Shown: positions 10,876 through 52,448 of the stretch, piece by piece
Position numbering within the stretch: the stretch's first letter is position 1
Layout: each line of letters opens with the position of its first letter
From: Ylistrum balloti
Taxonomy: Eukaryota
Direction: 5' to 3'
Length of the DNA: 64,000 nt
Assembly (NCBI RefSeq): GCF_031769215.1
Contig: NW_026782193.1
Span: 1,054,001-1,118,000, forward strand
Notes under the pieces: generated by a model
What the model saw: the letters and a program-made list of their open reading frames with translations, nothing else
Told to the model about the DNA's origin: nothing
Database searches by the model: none
Position numbers and translations under genes: made by a program

Positions 10876-12374
10876 CTGAGAGCCATCGGGCATCACCATT
10901 TGGGTTAGTCTCGTAGTATAATGAAGTTTTGATCGATCACTTTTACAGTACAATCAAAATCGAGTTGAGGGAAGGTACACTAACCTCATCATTCAGTAAT
11001 TTTCGTTATTTTCATATATCATAATTCGATACATTTCGCAATTTGCTTCATAGCTGTTTTACATGTGTTGAGGATGGTACACCTGCCACTAGGCCAGTTC
11101 GGATGACTTTGAACGTGGCGTGCAGAACCTCGGGTTACTTCGAAGGTCCGTTATCTAGAAGGTCTATTACTCAAAGGATCCAATATTCTGAAAATACGTC
11201 GATCAAAACGGACAAAAAACATCGTAAACAAGATGTTAACAAAATAATGTATAATTTTGAAAGTACCTGATCATAAATTTAGGGCAGTGATCAGGGTCTG
11301 TCAGTATACCCGTAGTATAGGTTTAGTCTAATACGACACTGGTCTCAAGAAACCGAAATTTAATTCGTTGGAGTCATAATTACCACTCTCGCATAGATAA
11401 TTTAGATAAAATAGACGATACCGAAATGAATTTTTAAAAAAATGGTGTACAAGAAAGTTAAGATTACCACGGGCTTAAAATTCTAAGGCCGTGATATTAC
11501 TATTTTTATTCGATTATAACATCTTAAGCTCATCTTGGAATTAATGGCATCAGTTCATTAAATAAAACTTGTTCTCGATTTTAACAGGGACATATATAAC
11601 ACATATTTACGTCTCTGATTTTAATATGATATTTGGTTTTTTTCTCACATTTCCCAAAATGAAAAAAAAACAGTCAATATTCAAATTGGCCTTACTGTTA
11701 TATATCGTTGTTCACATGCCCGTTATTTCTGATGTATATTGAGAATTATTGTCTTTTGCAAAGGGGACCTCGAATGTTCCTAAATTTTTGTTTACTTTGT
11801 TCTCCATGAGTCATGGTACTACATGATAGGCCAGTTTAATTATCTGATATTGTCTGATTACGTTTTAGAATTTCTCATTTTCTCTAGATTGTACTTCAAC
11901 AGTTGTAGATTGTCCCGTCTTCTCGTCTTCGTCTATTTCCATCCCGTTGATGCTGTTCTTGGACTTTATTGTTGTCTCGTTGTTTCCTCAGTAAATTTCC
12001 AAAGTTACTTTGTGTCATACTCAGATTCTCGTTTTCATACAGACATGACTGTTTGTCTAGTCAGATTTTTAAGACTTTCAACTTTGCAAACGCTTTGTTT
12101 TTTAGTAAACACAATTCGAATATACATGTATATACTGGTCACGATAGTTACGGAAGAAAGCTTACATACTATAAAGATGGATTATCGCATAACGAGAGGA
12201 AAATCGATAAAAAAAAATGTTTGTTGCATTAGCAAAGTCGTGATGACGTAAGAGAAATTGTAGGAATATTGGGTCTCCGGACTCTTGAAATTTCGGAATA
12301 TATGGCGGTCACCAAAAATTTACCACACAATTAATTCAGTCCGTCGATGTAAGAGACCTTATCAGAATAACAAC

Positions 12375-14180
12375 AATTACGTGTATGATAATGTCTGTAA
12401 CCAATTGTACACGTGTATGATATTGACTGTAACAAATTGTACACGTGTATGTTATTCTCTGTAACCAATTGTACACGTGCATGATATTGACTGTAACAAA
12501 TTGTACACGTGTATGTTATTCTCTGTAACCAATTGTACACGTGTATGATATTGACTGTAACCAATTGTACACGTGTATGATGATGTCTGTAACCAATTGT
12601 ACACGTGTATGATGATGTCTGTAACCAATTGTACACGTGTATGATGATGTCTGTAACCAATTGTACACGTGTATGATGATGTCTGTAACCAATTGTACAC
12701 GTGTATGATATTCTCTGTAACCAATTGCACACGTGTATATTGTCTGTAACCAATTGTACACGTGTATATTGTCTGTAACCAATTGTACACGTGTATGATA
12801 TTGTCTGTAACCAATTGTACACGTGTATGATATTGTCTGTAACCAATTGTACACGTGTATGATATTGTCTGTAACCAATTGTACACGTGTATGTTATTCT
12901 CTGTAACCAATTGTACACGTGTATGATATTGACTGTAACCAATTGTACACGTGTATGATATTGTCTGTAACCAATTGTACACGTGTATGATATTGTCTGT
13001 AACCAATTGTACACGTGTATGATGATGTCTGTAACCAGCAATAGCGTGGATGATGTATGTAACCAGTTGTACATGAGTACTTGATGTCTGTCAGCAACTG
13101 AACACGTGTATGATGATGTCTGTAACCAATTGTACACGTGTATGATGATTGTACACGTGTATGTTGATGACCAATTGTACACGTGTATGTGATGACTGCC
13201 ACGAATTGTACACGTGTATGTTGATGACTGCCACGAATTGTACACTGATGACCAATTGTACACGTGTATGTTGTGTTTGTACACGTGTATGATGATGTCT
13301 GTAACCAATTGAACACGTGTATGATGATGTCTGTAACCAATTGTACACGTGTATGATGATGTCTGTAACCAATTGACCACGTGTATGATATTGACTAACC
13401 AATTGTTCACGGGTATGATATTCTCTGTAACCAATTGTACACGTGTATGATATTCTCTGTAACCAATTGTACACGTGTATGATATTGTCTGTAACCAATT
13501 GTACACGTGTATGATATTCTCTGTAACCAATTGTACACGTGTATGATATTGACTGTAACCAATTGTACACGTGTATGATGATGTCTGTAACCAATTGTAC
13601 ACGTGTATAATGATGTCTGTAACCAATTGTACACGTGTATGATATTGACTAACCAATTGTACACGTGTATATTGTCTGTAACCAATTGTACACGTGTATG
13701 ATATTCTCTGTAACCAATTGTACACGTGCATGATATTGACTGTAACCAATTGTACACGTGTATGATATTCTCTGTAACCAATTGTACACGTGTATGATAT
13801 AGTCTGTAACCAATTGTACAAGTGTACGGTGTTGTCTGTAGCCAATTATGTATATCTATGTATCTCTAACCAGCAATAGCGTGGATGATGTATGTAACCA
13901 GTTGTACATGAGTACTTGATGTCTGTCAGCAACTGAACATGGGTATAGTTATGTCTGTAATCAGTTATGTAAAGTGATGACTGCCACGAATTGTACACGT
14001 GTATGTTGATGACTGCCACGAATTGTACACGTGTATGTTGATGACTGCCACGAATTGTACACGTGTATGTTGATGACTGCCACGAATTGTACACGTGTAT
14101 GTTGATGACTGCCACGAATTGTACACGTGTATGTTGATGACTGCCACGAATTGTACACGTGTATGTTGATGCCTGTAACT
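12375..14180. repeat. ~1.8-kb minisatellite of ~32-bp units (TGTAACCAATTGTACACGTGTATGATATTCTC and variant TGTTGATGACTGCCACGAATTGTACACGTGTA)
   Basis: Directly visible; it generates the periodic ORFs between 12331 and 14236. An interrupting ~75-bp block (CAGCAATAGCGTGGATGATG...) occurs twice, at ~13035 and ~13870. Confidence 0.95.
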
Positions 14181-15944: not shown

Positions 15945-17017
15945 AGTAGCCATCTTGAAGATATGTCCCCCACTAAACCACGTACGAGTGAAATTGCTCT
16001 TCCTGAATGGTAAGTTGGATGCTTGACCGGTTTTCAGTCTCCATGACCTCGTGTACAAGTAGGATTAGGGACCTAAATAGATTTGGTTTAGGTAGGGGTA
16101 ATTTTAAAGTTCGTATAGTGCATTAAAAAAATGGTCAAAATCAGAGTTGGCCACCTGTCAGCCATGTCGTTTATTTTATCGGTCCCAAAATCAAACGGGC
16201 ACAACTAGGGACTAGGAATATAGGACACTATATATGAAATTTGAGAAAATCTATCCAGTATTTTCCCCCAAGAACTACCGATAACAAACTTTATTTTGAC
16301 AAAATCAAAGATGACCACCAGGCTGCCATTTTATTTTTCTTATCAGTCCAAAAATCAATGGGCACATCCAATCTCTTCCAGAGTGCATTGTGGTATCCCA
16401 GTAACACCTCTGTACACGTTTCATGCCATTTCAAGATTCTTGATTAATAGATAGTAAACATTCACCAAGTGCTGTTTACATTTTGTACTTTCGCTTTTCA
16501 ACCACCGACTGTTCTCTTGATACATGTCAATATACATGTGACTAAGTAATGACGGTAATTCGGCTACAATATTGGCACATTTCCGTCACACAAGCATCAA
16601 TGTCATTGTTTATGTTGATCGAAGGCATTTTTGCCAGATTTCAAACGTTAACACTGACTACGAGGACAAATACTGGTAGTCTGTGAGCCGTTTACAGAGG
16701 TGTATTGTGACCGTTAAGGAACGTCAACTCTTGTAGAGATTGGGGAAGAACTAAGGGCCAAGGAGAACCCACATATGAAATTTGAGAAAGATCCATAAGC
16801 ACTTCTCAAGAAATAGCGATAACAAAGTTCTTTGTAAAATTTCAAGATGACCATCTGTCAGCTGTATTGTTTTTTTTTCTGATCAGGCCAAAAATCAAAC
16901 CTACATGTAAACTTTGAGAAAGGTCGATCAAATACTTCAAAAATTGTTTACAGACAGACGGACAGCAGACAATGGATGAAGGGTGATTTGAATAGCCTTA
17001 CATCTGGCAAGCTAAAA
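15945..17017 (-). mobile_element. Degraded Helentron/HINE-like non-autonomous element, same family as 28257-29346, interrupted by ~300 bp of unrelated sequence
   Basis: Shares unit motifs GCACAACTAGGGAC, CATATGAAATTTGAGAAAGATCC, AGAAATAGCGATAACAAA and a terminal GACAGACGGACAG microsatellite with the better-preserved copy. Confidence 0.6.
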
Positions 17018-17657
17018 ATGTCTATGAAGAAAACAAAATATCACAGAAGCTGAAATAGAATGTGCGACCCAATGAAAATTTAACAAATGTAAGAAGTAAC
17101 GTTTTACTCTCTGTGCTGTAGATACCGATGTGGAATTTATTGACGTTTCTAAATGTAAAATCAGCATTGATGAGAGCATAAGCACTTGATCATTTTTTTT
17201 TCAATATTTCAGTATCAGCACTTGTACCAACTTTCGAGGAGAGAATTTAAGTTACATCTGATCACACTGGTTTAGATTCAGGTGTCTAGAAGTTGGTTCA
17301 TGGGTGCACTGCATATCAAACATGCACTTGAATCCATCCATGATTTACATTCTCGGCCCCCATCGGCTGTCAAGCTTTTGTTATTCCATACCGTCGGAGT
17401 AAAACTAAGGGCAGAAACTCCAGAAGATTAGAGTGTTTTTTAATGCATATTGCTTCAGGTAACAACTTCTTCGATCTGTAGAGAACAACACAACAGAGAT
17501 AAAAGATATTTTTTTCTGGTGATTATTATTTGATATAACTCATTGTAATTGCATTTCATTTCGTTGTTGGTTATGTTTAGGTTGAATCAGGTGGTTATAG
17601 GCCATACCTTTTTAATATCATGTGCAGAAACGAAAAGTGACAAAAATAGAGAATTTT

Positions 17658-18434
17658 CATATTGTGAGATAAGAATTGGAATATTACTGATGTTTATACC
17701 CTTAATGTTTTTGTTATGTTTTAGTTTAATGGCCAAAATTTCAACACAGAGAATAAAGATATATGGCGCGATTGGATCACCTTGTCGACAGCCCCTTCTT
17801 ATATTGATGGATGAAGATACATTACCACCTTGATTAACAAAAGCACTGACATTAGTATGAAAAACTTTTATCCATTTACGAATATCTGGACCAAAATTAA
17901 AGAATTTGAAAACCTTGTCAATAAATTTCCATGAAACGGAATCAAATGCTTTCTCAAAATCTATCATTAACAGCATTCCGGGAATATTTTTATCCTCTAC
18001 ATGTTGCATAATGTCATATATTAATCTTGTGTCCTCCCCAATATAACGACCTGAGATAAAACCTGACTGATCCTCACTAATTAATGAGTCTAAAACTTTC
18101 TTAATTCTTCTAGCTATGGTTCCTGATGCAATTTTATATACTATATTCAACAATGTAATTGGTCGCCAATTCTTAAGAAATTGTCTAGACTTATCTCCCT
18201 TTGGAATACATACTATAACCCCCTGCCTTTGTGTTACCGATAACCTCCCTTTTTCATAACCCAAATTAATAGACCTTAAAATGAACCCCCCCCCCCCCCC
18301 CCCCAAGATATTTCCAAAAACATTTAAAAAACTCGACAGTAAAACCATCCGTACCTGGGCTTTTATTATTTTTCATACACTTCAAAGTAATTGTTGCTTC
18401 CTCCAAAGTAATTTGCCCTTCTAAACTTTCTGAA
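17658..18434 (-). pseudogene. Inverted segment of LINE ORF2: RT subdomains from SESLEGQITLEE...KSPGTDG through NWRPITLLN, IDFEKAFD, RGCRQGDP to ISQY
   Basis: ORF 17587..18348 plus manual extension. A 19-nt C run (18286-18304) frameshifts the segment. The ORF tail after ISQY is read-through into flanking DNA. Confidence 0.9.
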
Positions 18435-20139
18435 ACACCTCTCTTATATTAGATGGCTCTGAAATATCATTAAAAGAATCTATTTTAGAATTGAATGCTT
18501 TCGCAAAATTCTCTGGTTTGAATCTAAATATTGACAAAACACAAGTGATCTGGATAGGAAGCAAAAAATATAGTGAAGATACTTTGTTACCTGACTTGAA
18601 ATTACAGTGGGGAAAGGTCAAATTCACGCCTCTTGGAATTTAATTCAGTGTCAATCTTCATGAAATTCCAAAATTAAACTATGATAAAAAATTAATTAAA
18701 TTGAAATCTATCATTAAGATGTGGAATAGGAGATCACTGACTCCAATTGGGAAAATTCATCTTATTAAATCTTTAATGATATCACAGTTTAACCATTTAT
18801 TTATGTCTTTGCCAAACCCAGACAACCAGTTCTTGAATAAGCTCAATTCCATCCTTTTTAGCTTTTTATGGAACAGTAAAACTGACAAGGTAAAGAGAGA
18901 TATTGTTACCCAGAATTTTGATAACGGTGGACTTAAAATGGTAGATATAAAGTTGTTTATAGATAGTCTGAAATTAGGCTGGATTAGAAGATTACACCAG
19001 AAATCTGCTAAATGGCAAGCAATTCTTCAAACATATATTGACCTACATATGCTATCTTCCTGTGGAAGTGATTACATTCAGAAATGTTGTAATATCTGTA
19101 GAAATAATTTCTGGAGTGATGTTTTCAAAGCCCTGTTGAGGTTCAGTGAAAGGGTGGGGGTAGAATATGTTAAGAAAAATATTTGGAAAACTCCTTTATG
19201 GTATAATAAAGATTTGTTGATAGGGAAGACAAGTATATTCTACAAGACATGGTATGATAAGGGAGTGATGATAGTTAATGATTTATTCAAAGATTTTTCT
19301 ACTGGCACTTTCTACACTTTTCAAGATTTTAAGCAAATTTATAATGTAAATTCAAATTTCCTTGAATACCATGGTGTAGTCTCTGTGGTTAAGTCATATT
19401 TAGCTAGATCTGACTTTGTAAGAACATGTACCTCTCAAGTTTTTCCAACCATTCCAAGTAGTATTGAGTGTTTTGTAAAAAAAGGAAATGGGTCAAAAGA
19501 TATATATATAATCTTTTAGTAAAAAACGATATAATTTCTACTGGGAGGAAAAGATGGGAAGAAATATTAGAATTTGATGTTCTAAATTGGAGGGATATTT
19601 ATAAAAATTGTTTTCGTGCAACAAAAAATACAAAACTTCAATGGTTTCAGTACAGAGTGGTTCAACACATCTTAACAACAAATTTATACATGTTTAAAAT
19701 TCAACTACTGAATAACCCACACTGTACATTCTGTAACTTAGAAAAGGAGACAATTATTCATATTATGTGGGAATGTCCAGAAGTTCGAAAATTTTTAGAA
19801 AGTGTAGAAATTTTGCTGGAGGCTCTTTTTATTCCATTTTCCTTCAATAAAATAAGTTTTCTGTTTGGTTTCATTGCTAATAAAAATCAGTTAATCAGTA
19901 GCAAACTTGACAATGAAATCTTAATTATCATTAAATATTACATATATAAGGCAAGATGTCAACACAAAGCCTTAAGTGTATATAGTCTTATTTATTCAGT
20001 CAGGGAATTTTATACCTTTCAGAAATATATTGCCAATAGTAAAGGTGAACAGGCACAGTTAAGTTTTAATGAGGAAGGAATGGAGAAAATTATTGGACTT
20101 GGCCAATTCTTAACTTTAAATACATTTACTGTCATGTAG
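18435..20139 (+). pseudogene. Forward segment of LINE ORF2: post-YADD RT, thumb and C-terminal CCHC zinc knuckle (CTFCNLEKETIIHIMWEC)
   Basis: Manual translation from 18437 gives TSLILDGSE...FSGLNLNIDKT...LGI*FS..., continuing into ORFs 18701..19519 and 19468..20139. One in-frame stop and a frameshift at an (AT)n run near 19500. Confidence 0.9.
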
Positions 20140-20303
20140 TATGTTTTACCGTATTTTAGTATTCTCTGCCTTTACAGTATAGCAGGCCCCTTGCTTACCC
20201 TTATAGTATTTATTTATTTATTTATTTATTTACCAGGTATTTTTCTTTATACTCGAGTCCCTATTGTTTCGCTGATTATTGCAATTTTTACTAACCCAGA
20301 TCA

Positions 20304-20312
20304 CCTCTCTCT

Positions 20313-20364
<52 letters not shown>

Positions 20365-20365
20365 C
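20304..20365. repeat. (CT)n microsatellite with a C run inside the LINE 3' UTR
   Basis: Directly visible. Confidence 0.9.
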
Positions 20366-20730
20366 TCTTTATCTTTATGTGTAGTATTGATGTATGTGTA
20401 GGAGTGGGTGTGTAAGGGTAGTGTTGTGATGTTAGTAAGGGTGTTGATGAAAATGCCAGGCGATGATGTATGGATGGATTTCAAGTTATAATGACAAATT
20501 GTGTTGATAGTTAGGTTGATGATGAGGTGCATATGTGATAATGAATGCTGAGGATGAATCTATTGACATGAAGGTGGTGACAAAGGCATATTGAATATGA
20601 CAATGATGAAGAATGTATTGACATGATTACTTGATTGAGATCATGATGACTGATGATTATGATGAGGAGGTAATGTTTATAATGAGGAGGATAATGATGA
20701 TGAGGTAATGTTTATAATGAAGAAGATAAT

Positions 20731-20903
20731 NNNNNNNNNNNNNNNNNNNNNNNNNNNNNNNNNNNNNNNNNNNNNNNNNNNNNNNNNNNNNNNNNNNNNN
20801 NNNNNNNNNNNNNNNNNNNNNNNNNNNNNNNNNNNNNNNNNNNNNNNNNNNNNNNNNNNNNNNNNNNNNNNNNNNNNNNNNNNNNNNNNNNNNNNNNNNN
20901 NNN
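20731..20903. other. Assembly gap (173 N) in a (GAT)-rich low-complexity tract of the LINE 3' UTR
   Basis: Run of N. Confidence 0.99.
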
Positions 20904-21531
20904 ATGGTGATGTGTGAGTGAGCATATTGTATGTTGTATGTTTGATGATGTTTTGTTGATGTAATTGTTATGTACATTAAAAACTCTTGAAAAATAAAAA
21001 AAAAAAAAAAAAATAGAGAATTTTGATTGACAAAATTACCTGGACATTTCAGCAAATGCAACTAAACGTTTTGTTCCCCGTTATATGTTTATAATTTCCT
21101 AAAAGATTCATTTCTGCTTTTCCTATTGGGCCTCTGCAGGACAAGATTCTCCATTTAAACCTAAGAGTTCCCTTCACCCAAGGATATTACTCTTAGACAA
21201 AATTTGGTAAAAATCCCTTCATGGTGCCAAAAGACAACAAATTTTCACAGATTTCCATCTATTCCCCCTATTAAGACCAACCTTCTCCATCCAGGGGTCA
21301 GATTCATGTTGATACAAATTTCAATTCCCCTTCAACGTTCAAATCTAGACCTATAGTAGAGAAAAGCATTTTAACGAATTTGTAAAATTTTTCCTTCTTC
21401 CTTGTTTGTGACTGCATTAAGACTAAGTGACCAGATAAACCGTGAGGCTTTGTAGTGAATCTAATACACTTTGATAATAAACTATTACTACCAGTAATCT
21501 ACTGAGGTATGCCAGGGAGGGTATCATGAAG

Positions 21532-21910
21532 AACAAGAGTACCGCAAAGCGGAACAAATACGCCCGTGAATATCCAAAACAGCAAAGGGGCATAACTCTT
21601 ATACAAATCGTCTAATCAAAACCCCGATCAGGAACACATAATTTCATATCATGGTGATTAAGCCTACCAGGTTTCATAAAGATCGGCTGAAAAATGTTGG
21701 AGATCTCCAGGCAAGATTTCTATAGTGAAATAAACAAAGGGCCATAACTCTTGTTCAAATCACCAAATCAAAACCCTGTTCAAGAAAACACAACTTCATA
21801 TCATGGTGATTAAGCCTACCAAGTTTCATAAAGATCGGCTGAAAAATGTAAGAGATCTCCGGACAAATAAAAGTTTAAGACGGACGCCGGCCGGACGGAT
21901 GGACAGCACC
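21532..21910 (-). mobile_element. Second HINE/Helentron-like non-autonomous element with two ~150-bp internal repeats
   Basis: One end is AACAAGAG plus a short hairpin (CCGC-AAA-GCGG); the unit AAAGGG(C)CATAACTCTT...GCCTACCAAGTTTCATAAAGATCGGCTGAAAAATG is duplicated; the other end has a GACGGAC-type microsatellite. Confidence 0.6.
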
Positions 21911-26518: not shown

Positions 26519-29500
26519 TCAATTAGGCATCCAGAACTGTATAGGAGGCTGTGGCTGCATGCTACTATTTGGTGGGGGAGGAGGTGGCAGTGGTTGCTGA
26601 GGTTGAAACTGCTGTCCAGGGCCAGGGGCGAACTGTGGAGGATTTTGAGGGGCATATTGGGGGGCAAACTGAGACTGATTTGGTGGGGGTGGCGGTATAT
26701 TAGCAAAGCTTGGAGGTGGTGGCTGGAGCTGTTCTTGTGGTATTCTCTGGCCCATTCCTGGATGTGGGGGTGGCATCTCCTCTGGAGTGGGAAGACGCTG
26801 CCCTGGCAAAGGCATGATTTGCTCCCCAGGAATCCTCTGTATAGGAGGTGGGGGCCCAGCCACTGTAATAGCCTGTGAGACATTGACAAACTGTGGAGAA
26901 GGACTTGGTGAGGAGTGTTGAGGATATGGGTGAGCCTGTTCTTGGCCTGGGTTGCCAGCCAGCTGTGGCTGTGGGTAAGGCTGATTGGGAGGGGGCTGAT
27001 TTGGGAAGGGCACTTGGGGCTGGAGTTGGTTGATCTGCATTATCTCCTGTTGTTGCTGAGCATTTGGAGACTCTGGGAGTGGGGGATACTGTCCCTGTGG
27101 AAACTGTTCCTGTGGAGGTGGTGGAGGAGGCATTCCTTGTTGCTGAGGAGGAGGGGGCATGCCCTGTTGTTGGGGTGGGGGAGGCATGCCCTGTTGTTGG
27201 GGTGGCAGGATGTGCTGTTCAATACCTGGGGGCAGACCCTGCTGTTGAGGAGGTGGGGGTAACATGTGAGCTTCCCCAACAATAACAGGAGCAGCCTGCT
27301 GGTAGATCTGTGGAGCATTGGAATACTGGTTGTATTGATATTTCTGAGCCTCCTTCTGCTGTTGCTTCATTGAAGAATTGATTTCATCATCATCTTCATC
27401 TGAACCATAGGCTGCAACAAAGATCAAACAACATCTTTTATCTGGTCAATTTAACTTTTGTCATTTACTAACATCACTTTCCCTCCTTAAATATAATAAA
27501 TTGTCTGAAATATGATATTTAAATACAAAAATAAAAACAACTAGGGATTACAGGTGATTTGTGAAAAATATGAACCCATCAGGTCTAACCATTAGGCTGA
27601 ATCTGTATATGTGTTATGTTTAGTCTAAAAAGTTCGGTCAAAATTGTTATTAAGGTTTATCCAATATTTCCCCGTCTACACTGATATCCCTACACCAATG
27701 AGATGCTTACCTGAGACACTGCCTAATGCACCTTTGGACTTTTTCCTCTCCATTCCACCTTGCCTATCACCTCCTTGTCTTTTTAAATTCATTCCTGGAG
27801 AGAAAGATATTAACTTTAAGCATTCTATTGAAAATTCTGTCATCATCGAGTGTGACATTCCAATTGAGTGATTTCTCTGGATGATGACATGTATAATGAG
27901 AAATTTTAAAGCTTAACACAATTGGACAACATGGTAACAAAGATATTAAAAATGCTATCACAGAAAAATCTTTGGTGAAAATATTAATCTCCTGAAGATA
28001 AAAAACAATAACTTCCAATTCAAACAGAACAGCAATCGTGAGTGAAAGTCATCCATTGCTAAATACTTCCCCCCTCTCCCATGTCTATAAAATAAGAAAA
28101 TAGATGTCATGGTTGTATTGGTGATGGAATGATGTATCAAATTTCATCAATTTGGATCAATGTTTAAACTTCGACCAATTAGAGGTCATTGCAGCCATGT
28201 TTAATGTCATGTGACAAAAAAAAATAAAAAAATGTCAGGAAAGAAAAATAATCATGACAAGAGATCCCAGAGGGATCTTGGCGCCCACCATTTGAGGATC
28301 TGTTTTCAGTTCTTGAAGATTTGTTTATTTTTTTTTGTTTGTTACAGGTGTTGTAAATGTTCATGAACTGGTCTTCATTGAATGTACTCAATGATGGCAC
28401 AAGACATTTTTATTAAGCACCTATTTGCAAATATCATTTGAAAAAAAACCCAAAGTATTATTAGATAGCAGTCAGTTACAGGTGGATAATGGACAATATA
28501 CTTGTGCTGTATTACTGTTGACATCCAAGATGGCTGCCTGTGGGCCACCTTGATTTCAAATCAGTCTAAAAAAGGTACAAGGCACAACTAGGGACCAAGG
28601 GAAACCAATATCTATGAAACATCAGAAGGATCCATCCAGTACTTCCTCAGATATAGCAGTAACAAGATTTTACTCTCAAAATCCAAGATGGCTGCCTGTC
28701 AGCCATCTTGATTTCGGATCAGTCCAAAAAGGTATAATGCACAACTTGGAACCAAAGGGAACCTGCATATGAAATTTAAGAAAGATCCATCCGTACTTTC
28801 CAAGAAATAGCAGTAACAAACTTTTACATTCAAAATCCAAGATGGCCACCTGTCTGCCATCTTGAATTCGAATCAGTCCAAAAAAGGTACAATGCACAAC
28901 TAGGGACAAAGTGGAAACTGCATATGAAATTTGAGAAAGATCCATCCAGTACTTTCCAAGAAATAGCAGTAACAAACTTTTACTTCCAAAATCCAAGATG
29001 ACTGCCTGTCGGCCATCTTGAATTCGAATCAGTCCAAAAAAGGTACAATGCACAACTAGGGACCAAGGGGAAACTGCATATGAAATTTGAGGAAGATACA
29101 TCCAGTACTTTCTCAGAAATAGCGGTAACAAACTTTTACTTCCAAAATCCAAGATGGCCACCTGTCGGCCATCTTGAATTCGAATCAGTCCAAAAAAGGT
29201 ACAATGCACAACTAGGGACAAAGTGGAAACTGCATATGAAATTTGAGAAAGATCCATCCAGCACTTTTCCAGAAATAGCGGTAACGTACGGACGTACGGA
29301 CGGACAGACCACGGACGCAGGGCGATTTGAAAAACCCACCATCTAAAAAAGGAGAATTAAGAAAGGGAACAATAACATTGTCCAACTGATTTCATCTGGA
29401 GTGACTTATCATAAACATTGAACTGTGACTTACCAGGTAGTGGGGGAGGAGGCATTAGTTTTTTGTCCTGGTCTGATATCTCCTGATTCGGGGGATGAGG

Positions 29501-49985: not shown

Positions 49986-50353
49986 GCAATATAGTCCATT
50001 TCAAAATAATTGCTGCGTGTGTAAAGACAACGTCGAATGACATTTTATATTGAATGAAATCGTGAAAGTGATCGAATTTCTGACTGGCAATATATATTTT
50101 TGAATCTTTCGCTTTAAGATTTTTATGAATAAAACACTAGGCGCAGAGGCGACTTATGTTTGTTTACCGAGTCGTGAAGTCATAATACGTCTCTGGATTT
50201 ATTGACGTAGTATGCCAGTGTTCTTGATCGATTTTAAACAACAAGAAATTAGTTGAATATATTCATCGTATACACTTATCAGAATTGAAAATCAAGGACA
50301 CGACCAGACTCGTCTACATATGCCACTTTTCTGATGACGAACCAACATGGATG

Positions 50354-52448
50354 ATATTTTCAAGAAGATAACTTGTGATCAGGATAGAGTCCAGCTACAA
50401 CATGACTTAACATCACTTCAAAACTGGTCGGACAAATGGCTATTGCGATACCACCTAGATAAATGTGTTGTGTTAACAGTTGGTAAAGACACAATTAACG
50501 GTACACCTGTGTATTTCCTGAGTTCTGGTGATGAGACGCATTATCTACGCCAAGTTGATAGAGAAACAGACTTAGGAGTAACCATTGACTCCAACTTATC
50601 GTTTGAACATCACATACAGGAGAAAAAAGAAAAGATAGACTGCAGGCGGAAAATTACCGTCCTGTCAGCATTTTAAGCATCGTGTGACCTCCGCAATGGA
50701 CAACATCCATTGTGGGGTCCCCCAGGGTAGCTTACTGGGCCCTCTTTTATTTCTGATTTATGTAAATGACATGCGGATAAGTATAGACATTTCCTGTAAA
50801 CTACTTCTGTATGCTGATGACAGTGCAAATATTTTTTCACATCACTGTCCCAAAACAATCTCTTCAAAATTATCCTTAGTTTTGGAATCATGTCATGATT
50901 GGCTTGTTGACAACAAACTATCATTACATTTAGGTAAAACAGAAAGTATTTTATTTGGACCAAAGAGAAAATTAGGACAAGTACCCGAGGGTGATTTCAA
51001 AATTTCATGTAACGGTCAAAACATTTTTTCGCAATCTTCAGTAAAATACCTCGGTGTTACGATAGATGAATTTCTATCTGGAGAGGAAATTGTCTCCAAC
51101 ATTATCCACAAAATCAACCAAAGACTTAAATTTTTGTACAGAAATAGTAAATGTCTATCTCTAAAATCTCGAAAAACTTTATGTTCTGCTCTGATTCAGT
51201 GCCACTTTGATTATGCGTGCACCTCCTGGTATGAAGGAATTACTCAGAAACTCAAAGGTATACTCCAGACTACCCAAAACAAAATGGTCCGCTTTATTCT
51301 TAACCTTGATAACAGAACAAGGATCACTCTCACTGAATTAGAAAAACTAGGCATGCTAAATGTAGAAAGGAGGGTCCGTCAACTTCGCCTCAACCATACT
51401 TTTAACATCTATAATGGTAAATGTCCACAATATTTATATGAACTTTTCTCTCTAAACAAAAACTGTTGTGGTACTAGATCTGGAACGATGAACTTCTCAA
51501 TAAAAAACGTTAAAAGCATAGAAAGTTCTTCCTTTTCTACTTCGGCCGCAAAAGATTGGAATTCCCTTCCAGAAAATATTAAAAATTCTAAAAATAAATA
51601 TCATTTTAAAAACAAAGTAAAACAATTTCTGATGCTACAATCAAAAGGCGAATTTGACAACCCCTTCGTCTACTGTTGAGCTCAACCTCCACTTCTTTGC
51701 GTCTGGTTGAACGGGTAGTGATGTTATATTATTGTTCATATTATGTTATATTATTGTTCATGTTATATTATTATGTAATACCTCTTCAAATCCCATCCTT
51801 TTTCATAAATGCCCTGAAATGTGCCAAAACATTTTATTCACTTTCAGTATTTGTTTTCATATCTTCTATGTAAATGTAATTTTCTTTCAAATGTAGTGCT
51901 CTGTTTCATTTATAGTTAATGAAAATTAGATAAAGAAAATTAATTCAATCTCATTTCCATGGCTTTACATCTCAACCGGAAGGATTACACCTTAAATGGA
52001 CCCCATTGGAAATAAGCCTATTTTATAGGCTTTATGGGTAATCCAAGGCCAAAGGCATTTTCATCTGGTTTTATCAAATTTCTCTCTTTTTTATTTATAT
52101 TTCTAAATTTTCAACTATTTTACTTAAAAGATTTGCAAGCAGAGTGAAATTTAATTTCTGCGATACTAGTTTAAATTGTGATATTGTAAGGTATGTGAAA
52201 TACTTCTGTGATATCTTATATTTTATAATTAATAATTTTAAGAAATCCACAATAATTTATTACTGATTTTAATTGTTATGGAATTGCTTATGTAATATTT
52301 GTAATGTGCAATTTTATTATGCCTTTGACTGAATAAACAAATAAAAAAAAAATAAAAATAAAAATTAATAAAGCTAACAATGTTATGGGACTCATTAGAA
52401 GAACTTTCACATATCTGGATAATGACAACTTTATTCTTTTATACAAAT
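50354..52448 (+). mobile_element. CR1-clade LINE RT fragment split in two (50354-~50626 and ~52361-52448) by a younger insertion
   Basis: The left piece encodes LQHDLTSLQNWSDKWLL...DKC...ETDLGVTIDSNLSFEHHIQEK; the right piece resumes INKANNVMGLIRRTFTYLDNDNFILLYK, the expected continuation. Confidence 0.85.
50627..52360 (+). mobile_element. 5'-truncated L2/Crack-like LINE with an internal RT deletion, 3' UTR, AATAAA and A-rich tail, nested in the CR1 fragment
   Basis: ORF 50684..51679 has CGVPQGSLLGP, LYADD, LSLHLGKT, KYLGV and HFDYAC. An upstream AENYRPVSILS motif at ~50645-50680 abuts it directly. AATAAA at 52332 is followed by an A-rich tail. Confidence 0.85.

What the first reader, a model, noticed from the sequence alone, without database searches (positions are those of the whole stretch)
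17642..21024. Complete twin-priming signature in an invertebrate L1/Tx1 LINE, with the inversion breakpoint inside the YADD catalytic motif
Seen: the structure is TSD (AAAAATAGAGAATTTT, 17642-17657), then an inverted RT segment whose outer end stops at ...ISQY-G, a junction at ~18435, a forward segment starting (D)TSLILDGSE, the CCHC knuckle, 3' UTR, AATAAA-poly(A) and an identical TSD (21009-21024). The two halves are contiguous in ORF2 except for about 6 nt of the A-D-D codons. The 5'-most part of the inverted piece faces the junction, exactly the geometry predicted by twin priming; a later chromosomal inversion would not be expected to end precisely at the TSD. Established: twin priming is well described for mammalian L1 and much less documented elsewhere; A-rich targets, ~16-bp TSDs and AATAAA fused to the tail are L1 hallmarks. 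Inference: this mollusc-type family uses the mammalian-like two-primer integration route, and this copy was dead on arrival.
Basis: partly seen in the sequence, partly recalled or inferred. Interest (0 to 1): 0.75.

Follow-up and report, generated by a model that had tools for sequence, protein, structure and literature searches.

The report
Twin-primed L1-like insertion in scallop
A dead-on-arrival copy of an L1-like jumping gene in a scallop genome has its front part flipped exactly as the "twin priming" integration mishap known from human L1 predicts; the mechanism is well known, so this is a clean new example in a mollusc and not a new kind of thing.

Summary
An exact 16-nt target-site duplication (17642-17657 and 21009-21024) brackets three parts. 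First comes an inverted ORF2 piece (17658-18434, minus strand) that ends at the Y of YADD. Next is a forward piece (18435 onward) that starts inside the second D codon. Last are a CCHC finger, a 3'UTR and AATAAA plus A-tail.

Contigs from four public runs carry the family's normal, uninverted form. They join 17658 to 18435 on opposite strands with exactly 6 letters between, at about 17-21 times the depth of the flank contig. So the two halves are neighbours in the source element and 6 nt were lost. Both halves differ from those family contigs by about 0.55%.

Flank contigs from three other individuals leave the window exactly at 17657|17658. This suggests an empty allele, but it is not proven because their letters were not shown.

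The N gap lies in a tandem-repeat, C-poor part of the 3'UTR, not in coding sequence. The TSD ties its two sides together.

Best reading: twin priming by an L1-like LINE (confidence 0.85). The Tx1 placement is untested, and microhomology at the priming site is not shown.

The scan has one similar, unchecked note elsewhere in this genome (s1-237072, an I-group LINE). Interest is modest.

The parts
17642..17657 (.). 5' copy of the target-site duplication (AAAAATAGAGAATTTT)
   Evidence: Exact 16/16 match to 21009-21024; these are the only two occurrences in the window. Flank contigs from three other samples stop matching the window exactly after 17657.
17658..18434 (-). Inverted arm: ORF2 from upstream of the RT fingers (…SESLEGQITLEEA…) to the Y (plus one G) of YADD. 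Its RNA-3' end abuts the TSD. It carries a 19-C homopolymer at 18286-18304 that breaks the frame.
   Evidence: RVT_1 profile 1-145/205, E 8e-25. Human L1 ORF2p is the best solved relative, 4e-24. P0001 aligns up to Y235. Family contigs match with 0-4 differences.
18435..18437 (.). ACA: possible 3-nt microhomology at the inversion junction, shared by the end of the inverted arm and the start of the forward arm
   Evidence: An uninverted family contig in X5 follows the inverted arm up to 18437 before running on into upstream ORF2 sequence. The family joint puts the forward arm's first base at 18435. This rests on one low-depth contig; the chance of 3 nt matching is about 1/64.
18435..20139 (+). 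Forward arm, coding part: ORF2 from the second D codon of YADD ((D)TSLILDGSE…) through thumb/wrist and the CCHC finger (19723-19776) to the stop at 20137-20139. It is broken by a stop at 18641-18643 and a frameshift near 19500.
   Evidence: P0001 aligns from D238. zf-RVT E 2e-6. L1 ORF2p residues 797-899, E 6e-5. Family contigs read another letter at 18641 and lack 2 letters at 19500.
20140..20992 (+). 3'UTR: (TATT)n at 20207-20232, (CT)n at 20322-20368, a C-poor block from about 20390, a 35-nt tandem repeat at 20655-20730, and an assembly gap at 20731-20903 (length only estimated)
   Evidence: High-depth family contigs cover 20470-20730 with 0 differences.
20993..21008 (+). AATAAA (20993-20998) fused to the A-tail. 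The A run is 20996-21013; its last 5 A are counted with the TSD.
21009..21024 (.). 3' copy of the target-site duplication

Best explanation
This is one retrotransposition event of a young, multi-copy, poly(A)-tailed L1-like LINE of a scallop, and it went through twin priming.

Inferred steps:
1. The element's endonuclease nicked the bottom strand at TATTTTT/G. The T-run primed reverse transcription on the poly(A) tail, which gave the forward arm.
2. The top strand was nicked 16 nt away, at AATTTT/G, before the first cDNA was finished.
3. The freed top-strand 3' end primed a second reverse transcription inside the same RNA, at the G that follows the Y codon of YADD. This cDNA ran about 780 nt toward the RNA's 5' end and gave the inverted arm.
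4. The first cDNA stopped 6 nt short of that priming point.
5. The two cDNAs were joined, possibly over a 3-nt ACA microhomology.

The product lacks ORF1 and the endonuclease and has the RT split in its catalytic motif, so it was inactive from the start. That the break lies in YADD is a coincidence of where the primer landed and has no functional meaning.

Shown: the anatomy, the adjacency of the two arms in the source element, the 6-nt loss, and the equal divergence of the arms. Inferred: the order of nicks and priming.
For: - An exact 16-nt TSD bounds the composite.
- The forward arm ends in AATAAA plus an A-tail next to the 3' TSD.
- The inverted arm's outer end is …ISQY+G, and its inner end is the more 5' part of ORF2.
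- The uninverted family form is present in four runs from three studies: a joint 17658<->18435 on opposite strands with exactly 6 letters between. Its depths are 346, 285 and 178, against 16.8, 16.7 and 9.8 for the flank contig.
- Both arms differ from the high-depth family contigs by about 0.54% (4 of 739) and about 0.56% (9 of about 1600).
- The arms do not overlap, so this is not a fold-back duplicate.
- Neither junction shares more than 3 nt, so a k-mer assembly join is unlikely.
- The 16-nt TSD falls in the 10-20 bp range reported for human L1 5' inversions (PMC4245944).
- The defining features of twin priming were taken from PMC2912911.
- The first 16 nt of the forward arm are complementary to the 16-nt overhang at 10 of 16 positions; only 1.1% of windows in the element score as high.
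Against: - No listed contig from any run bridges 17657/17658 or 18434/18435 in the window's own arrangement. The two locus-specific junctions therefore rest on the reference assembly alone.
- By codon logic (Ala = GCN) the base next to the priming point does not match the TSD's last T. That means zero terminal microhomology at the 5' junction, where human 5'-inverted L1 copies often have some.
- The 10/16 complementarity sits 6 nt away from where a simple model needs it, and it was noticed post hoc.
- The 3-nt junction microhomology rests on one low-depth contig.
- An in-place inversion of the 5' part of an ordinary truncated copy would give the same final map.
- The gap hides part of the 3'UTR.
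Confidence: 0.85

Rival explanations
1. An ordinary 5'-truncated insertion whose first ~780 nt were later inverted in place by two breaks and rejoining.
For: It would give the same final map as seen. A small loss at a breakpoint is also possible.
Against: One break would have to fall exactly at the TSD/element boundary, leaving the TSD intact to the base. No inverted repeats are present that could drive recombination. The prior is far lower than for twin priming, which accounts for most short inversions in human genomes (abstract of 10.1101/2021.12.20.472354).
Confidence: 0.04
2. An assembly artefact: the reference assembler joined pieces of different copies of a ~20-copy repeat in the wrong orientation.
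For: No independent contig covers the two locus-specific junctions. The assembly has a gap in this element and a suspicious 19-C run that family contigs do not have.
Against: The joins share at most 3 nt, so a k-mer graph could not make them. A misjoin would not place the break at the same ORF2 position in both pieces with a 6-nt loss. It would also not produce a perfect 16-nt TSD at the outer ends together with a poly(A) tail.
Confidence: 0.06
3. Two separate insertions of the same family, head to head or nested.
For: The family has many near-identical copies.
Against: The inverted piece has no 3'UTR or A-tail of its own; a T-run at 17658 would be expected. There is no second TSD pair. The two pieces meet at the same ORF2 position to within 6 nt, and a single TSD bounds both.
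Confidence: 0.02
4. Twin priming in which the second cDNA was copied from a different RNA molecule of the same family, or a template switch by one RT.
For: The sequence cannot tell one RNA from two. Both arms are close to the family majority.
Against: Adjacency to within 6 nt is what a single RNA predicts. With two RNAs the two end points would be independent.
Confidence: 0.03

Closest known systems
Twin-primed (5'-inverted) L1 insertions of human and mouse (Ostertag & Kazazian 2001; features as summarised in PMC2912911)
   Same: One TSD of about 15 bp around the whole. Sense 3' arm with a poly(A) tail. Inverted 5' arm whose outer end is adjacent in the RNA to the start of the sense arm. A small deletion at the inversion point. 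Short microhomology possible at the inner junction. A T-rich/purine nick site.
   Different: The host is a bivalve mollusc, and the element is only 25-30%-level related to human ORF2p (E 4e-24 over the RT). No terminal microhomology is evident at the 5' junction. This is a single case, so no frequency can be given.
5' inversions in cell-culture assays (Yamaguchi, Kajikawa & Okada 2014, PMC4245944)
   Same: There, inversions came with TSDs of 10-20 bp, and the authors argue that a long 3' overhang is needed. The TSD here is 16 nt.
   Different: In that work inversions were seen only for human L1 in human cells, plus one zebrafish Nimb-2_DR insert in chicken cells. The authors concluded that inversions depend on host and LINE species. 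Here the event is natural, germline and in a scallop.
L1-clade ORF2 proteins (human LINE-1 ORF2p; PDB 8c8j, 8uw3, 8sxt)
   Same: Best solved relatives for both the RT piece and the thumb/wrist piece. C-terminal CCHC finger (zf-RVT). Poly(A) tail with AATAAA.
   Different: The 5' half (endonuclease, ORF1) is absent from this copy, so it could not be compared. Placement within L1 versus Tx1 was not done.
Tx1-group LINEs (site-specific; earlier notes in this genome report tRNA-gene-targeting Tx1 families, s1-234354)
   Same: Same broad L1/Tx1 superfamily features (RT plus C-terminal finger).
   Different: This copy sits in an anonymous A/T-rich site with an L1-type nick motif, and no specific target gene is evident. 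No phylogeny was run.

Membership tests
Twin-primed (5'-inverted) LINE insertion | A single target-site duplication bounds the whole composite | tested here: met
   16/16 exact, only two occurrences in the window, not extendable; chance about 1e-9.
Twin-primed (5'-inverted) LINE insertion | The 3' arm is in sense orientation and ends in the element's tail next to the 3' TSD | tested here: met
   ORF2 rest, 3'UTR, AATAAA at 20993-20998 and an A run up to the TSD. An N gap inside the 3'UTR was not read.
Twin-primed (5'-inverted) LINE insertion | The 5' arm is inverted, with its RNA-3' end at the 5' TSD and its RNA-5' end at the inner junction | tested here: met
   The minus-strand RT ends at …ISQY at 17658 and begins at …SESLEG… at 18434.
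Twin-primed (5'-inverted) LINE insertion | The two arms adjoin in the source element, with only a small deletion or duplication | tested here: met
   Uninverted family contigs in 4 runs join 17658 and 18435 with exactly 6 letters between. Relatives read QYADDTSL without a break.
Twin-primed (5'-inverted) LINE insertion | Microhomology at the inversion junction (frequent, not obligatory) | tested here: inconclusive
   3 nt (ACA, 18435-18437), supported by one low-depth contig of X5.
Twin-primed (5'-inverted) LINE insertion | Complementarity between the top-strand overhang and the RNA at the internal priming site | tested here: inconclusive
   The 6 family letters were not shown. By codon logic the terminal base mismatches. 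There is 10/16 complementarity to the RNA starting 6 nt downstream, in the top 1.1% of windows, but noticed post hoc.
Twin-primed (5'-inverted) LINE insertion | The empty site holds one copy of the duplicated target | tested here: inconclusive
   Flank contigs of about 1430 nt in X1, X2 and X9 match up to 17657 and then run on for 532-533 letters unlike the element. Their letters were not shown. Scans for the empty-site pattern found nothing.
L1-clade LINE | The RT and the following domains are closest to L1 ORF2p | tested here: met
   Among solved structures, human L1 ORF2p scores 4e-24 against 1.8e-17 for R2. The thumb/wrist piece hits L1 ORF2p only. No comparison was made with a curated LINE clade library.
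L1-clade LINE | C-terminal cysteine-histidine finger after the RT | tested here: met
   zf-RVT PF13966, E 2e-6, above Pfam's cut-off; CCHC at 19723-19776.
L1-clade LINE | Poly(A) tail, ~15-bp TSD, nick at T-run/purine | tested here: met
   Both inferred nicks read TTTT/G. The relative L001 also ends in a 27-A tail. This is a single insertion only.
L1-clade LINE | APE-type endonuclease at the ORF2 N-terminus, and an ORF1 | not testable with these tools
   This copy lacks the 5' part, and no full-length family copy could be fetched.
Tx1 group within L1/Tx1 | Phylogenetic placement with Tx1 elements; site-specific targets | not tested
   No reference clade sequences were on hand. The target here looks unspecific.

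The most novel reading that the evidence does not exclude
Twin priming may be a regular outcome for long-TSD LINEs in scallops: this L1-like family, and perhaps an I-group family noted elsewhere in the genome. That would mean the host-and-element conditions that cell-culture work found almost only for human L1 in human cells are also met in a lophotrochozoan germline. The family appears young and the insertion probably polymorphic, so it could serve as a natural non-mammalian system for studying second-strand cleavage timing.
Probability: 0.5. Interest if true: 0.45.

Novelty: new member of a known kind. Interest (0 to 1): 0.35.

Why it matters
Twin priming is documented almost only in mammals. 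All 22 papers in the held library that use the hyphenated term 'twin-priming' concern human, mouse or dog, apart from methods papers. None of the papers found with 'twin priming' plus 'invertebrate' or 'Tx1' links it to an invertebrate LINE. Experimental work concluded that 5' inversion depends on both the LINE and the host (PMC4245944).

A textbook-clean natural case in a mollusc, with a 16-nt TSD, supports the idea that a long overhang and early second-strand cleavage are properties of L1-like elements in general. For annotation, it also warns that head-to-head LINE fragments in invertebrate genomes can be single events. The mechanism itself is not new.

Tried and rejected
- Other copies of the family in the window: none by blastn or tblastn.
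- Pfam on the 69-aa start of the forward arm: no hit, too short.
- Word-indexed protein search with the RT piece: the best hit is 66% identical and no same-family protein appeared, so full-length family copies could not be fetched.
- Exact-protein look-ups of two flank ORFs, hoping to reach contigs of the empty allele: not on record.
- Fold-back (self-primed) cDNA: rejected because the arms do not overlap.
- Position of the flank contigs' ends: an empty-allele contig would end near 21557. An internal repeat starts at 21583, and the left ends (16754-16763) lie at a repeat boundary at 16749. This is compatible but too loose to count as proof.
- The big representative protein search and structure prediction were not used, because the protein's identity was not in doubt.
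Full report
**What is there**

The 16-mer AAAAATAGAGAATTTT stands at 17642-17657 and again at 21009-21024, and nowhere else in the 64 kb. Neither copy can be extended. At the window's base composition a chance match of 16 nt has probability about 1e-9. For the 11 nt that cannot be confused with the A-tail it is about 7e-7.

Between the two copies lie, in order:
- **An inverted piece, 17658-18434.** Its minus strand reads a reverse transcriptase that hits Pfam RVT_1 at profile positions 1-145 of 205 (E 8e-25). It ends at …ILISQY plus one G, right against the left 16-mer.
- **A forward piece from 18435.** It reads (N)TSLILDGSE… and runs through a zf-RVT finger (E 2e-6; CCHC at 19723-19776) to a stop at 20137-20139.
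- **A 3'UTR** with simple repeats and the N gap.
- **AATAAA at 20993-20998**, fused to an A run.

**Are the two halves neighbours in one element?**

Yes, by two independent lines of evidence.

1. *Relatives.* Five relatives at 57-66% identity from the word-indexed protein search read …SQYADDTSLILDGS… without a break. In BLASTP the inverted piece matches P0001 up to Y235, and the forward piece matches from D238. All five relatives split at the same window position in tblastn. In the DNA of one relative the stretch reads tat-gcc-gat-gat-act.

2. *Contigs of public runs laid on 17300-20730.* In four runs from three studies, a contig matches the minus strand from 17928 down to 17658. It then has six letters of its own and continues on the plus strand from 18435. 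In X1 this is record 2, positions 271 to 278; in X5 it is record 16, positions 84 to 91.
   - This is the family's normal, uninverted form.
   - Its depth (346, 285, 178) is about 17-21 times that of the flank contig in the same runs (16.8, 16.7, 9.8). The family therefore has tens of near-identical copies.
   - The loss at the break is exactly 6 nt. By the reading frame these are the last two bases of the Ala codon, the first Asp codon and the first base of the second Asp codon.

The high-depth family contigs differ from the window by 4 substitutions in 739 nt of the inverted arm and by about 9 in about 1600 nt of the forward arm. Both arms are thus equally close to the family's majority sequence, as one event predicts.

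**State of this copy**

Compared with the family contigs, the window has 13 more C in the homopolymer at 18286-18304, another letter at 18641 where the window has a stop codon, 2 more letters near 19500, and 4 more near 20072. Where this copy is broken, the family's majority sequence reads on. Some of these differences may be errors of the reference assembly. With or without them the copy could never have worked, because it lacks everything upstream of the RT and its catalytic motif is split.

**The N gap**

The gap (20731-20903) lies about 590 nt after the ORF2 stop, so frame is not at stake.
- Both sides are strikingly poor in C (4.7% and 4.4%, against 13-28% in neighbouring parts). They share 6-mers far above controls (27 of 85, control mean 8.3, P about 0.006).
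- A 35-nt tandem repeat runs up to the gap's left edge. That is a common reason for a short-read assembly to break.
- The left TSD copy lies on one side of the gap and the right copy on the other, which ties the two sides to the same insertion.

A family contig runs 19 letters into the gap; these letters were neither shown nor sought. The element's length (3351 nt as written) is therefore only approximate.

**Is the insertion polymorphic?**

In X1, X2 and X9, a contig of about 1430 nt at single-copy depth matches the left flank up to 17657. It carries two shared differences from the window (17406, 17526). It then continues for 532-533 letters that do not lie on the element.

A contig that entered the repeat would share at least a k-mer with it. 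Leaving exactly at the TSD's last base is what an empty allele predicts. The letters were not printed, and my attempts to reach them failed. I rate this as probable, not shown.

The other side of this result is that no listed contig bridges 17657/17658 or 18434/18435 in the window's own arrangement. The two locus-specific junctions therefore rest on the reference assembly alone. A misjoin is still unlikely for three reasons:
- The junctions share at most 3 nt.
- Both pieces break at the same ORF2 position.
- The outer ends carry a perfect TSD and a tail.

**Mechanism**

The map is the one twin priming predicts (features as summarised in PMC2912911).
- The bottom strand was nicked at TATTTTT/G and primed on the poly(A) tail.
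- The top strand was nicked 16 nt away at AATTTT/G.
- Its 3' end primed a second cDNA inside the same RNA, at the G after the Y codon.
- The first cDNA ended 6 nt short of that point.
- The two cDNAs were joined.

An uninverted family contig in X5 follows the inverted arm to 18437 before it continues into upstream ORF2 sequence. Since the forward arm starts at 18435, up to 3 nt (ACA) may be shared at the inner junction (one low-depth contig, chance about 1/64).

At the outer junction the genetic code (Ala = GCN) implies a C in the RNA opposite the primer's last T, so there is no terminal microhomology.

The first 16 nt of the forward arm pair with the 16-nt overhang at 10 of 16 positions, and only 1.1% of windows in the element do as well. 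That pairing, however, starts 6 nt downstream of the first copied base. One possible reading is that the overhang docked there through AGAGA/UCUCU while its frayed 3' end primed 6 nt upstream. This is speculation and was noticed after the fact.

**Rivals**
- *In-place inversion of an ordinary truncated copy.* It gives the same map, but it needs a break exactly at the TSD boundary.
- *Two separate insertions.* This is excluded by the missing second tail and second TSD.
- *Fold-back synthesis.* This is excluded because the arms do not overlap.
- *Assembly artefact.* See the section on polymorphism above.

**What kind of LINE**

The best solved relatives of both the RT piece and the thumb/wrist piece are human LINE-1 ORF2p (4e-24 and 6e-5; R2 proteins score lower). 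Together with the zf-RVT finger, the AATAAA plus A-tail, the 16-nt TSD and the TTTT/G nicks, this makes the element L1-like.

The closest relative found (P0001) comes from a marine metagenome. It has the same RVT_1-then-zf-RVT order and a 27-A tail.

Whether the family belongs to L1 proper or to the Tx1 group was not tested. The target here shows no sign of site specificity.

Earlier notes of this scan say the genome is a scallop's (s1-254187, s1-240613) and that Tx1-like families in it target tRNA genes (s1-234354). I did not check these.

**Novelty**

The mechanism is well known in mammals.
- The held library has 22 papers that use the hyphenated term 'twin-priming'. The 17 listed all deal with human, mouse or dog, or are methods papers.
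- No paper found with 'twin priming' plus 'invertebrate' or 'Tx1' reports a case outside vertebrates. The library is incomplete, so this is not proof of absence.
- Yamaguchi et al. (PMC4245944) saw 5' inversions only for human L1 in human cells, plus one zebrafish Nimb-2_DR insert. They tied inversions to TSDs of 10-20 bp and concluded that inversions depend on host and LINE.

The present case fits their overhang-length idea and extends the host range to a mollusc. The scan holds one similar, unchecked note in this genome (s1-237072, I-group LINE).

**Verdict**

This is a new member of a known kind, of modest interest.

Noticed in passing
window 50347-51679 (+): Another LINE-type RT fragment (RVT_1 profile 116-205, E 7e-13) with an intact …LLYADD… motif. 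It is unrelated at tblastn level to the family studied here. It looks like an ordinary 5'-truncated forward copy.
   Followed up: partly
window 16135-16358, 16749-16898 and 28581-29285: A satellite-like repeat of about 150 nt, 71-83% alike between copies. One unit lies about 750 nt left of the insertion, and a short array lies at 28.6-29.3 kb.
   Followed up: no
window 21583-21714 and 21735-21866: A direct repeat of 132 nt (87% identity) lies about 560 nt right of the insertion. It is close to where the putative empty-allele contigs would end (about 21557).
   Followed up: no
window 18286-18304: A 19-C homopolymer inside the inverted arm. Family contigs from four runs have 12-13 fewer letters there. 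It is either a real expansion in this copy or an error of the reference assembly.
   Followed up: partly
window 17653-17660 and 21005-21027 (target site): Both inferred nick sites read TTTT/G: the bottom strand TATTTTT/GTCAC and the top strand AATTTT/GATTG. The second-strand cut may therefore also have been made at the endonuclease's preferred motif. This is a single case.
   Followed up: no
window 12331-13845 (-): A long ORF (504 aa) with weak, repeat-like hits to the Sushi/SCR domain (E 2e-7, with no single stretch passing on its own). It may be an exon-rich or repetitive coding region.
   Followed up: no
L001 3064-3336: In the Tara Oceans contig that carries the closest relative, the 27-A tail is followed by odd A/T-run low-complexity sequence and then a 19-nt tandem repeat (…GTAGCCGGGTCAGACTGA…). 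The host organism is unknown.
   Followed up: no
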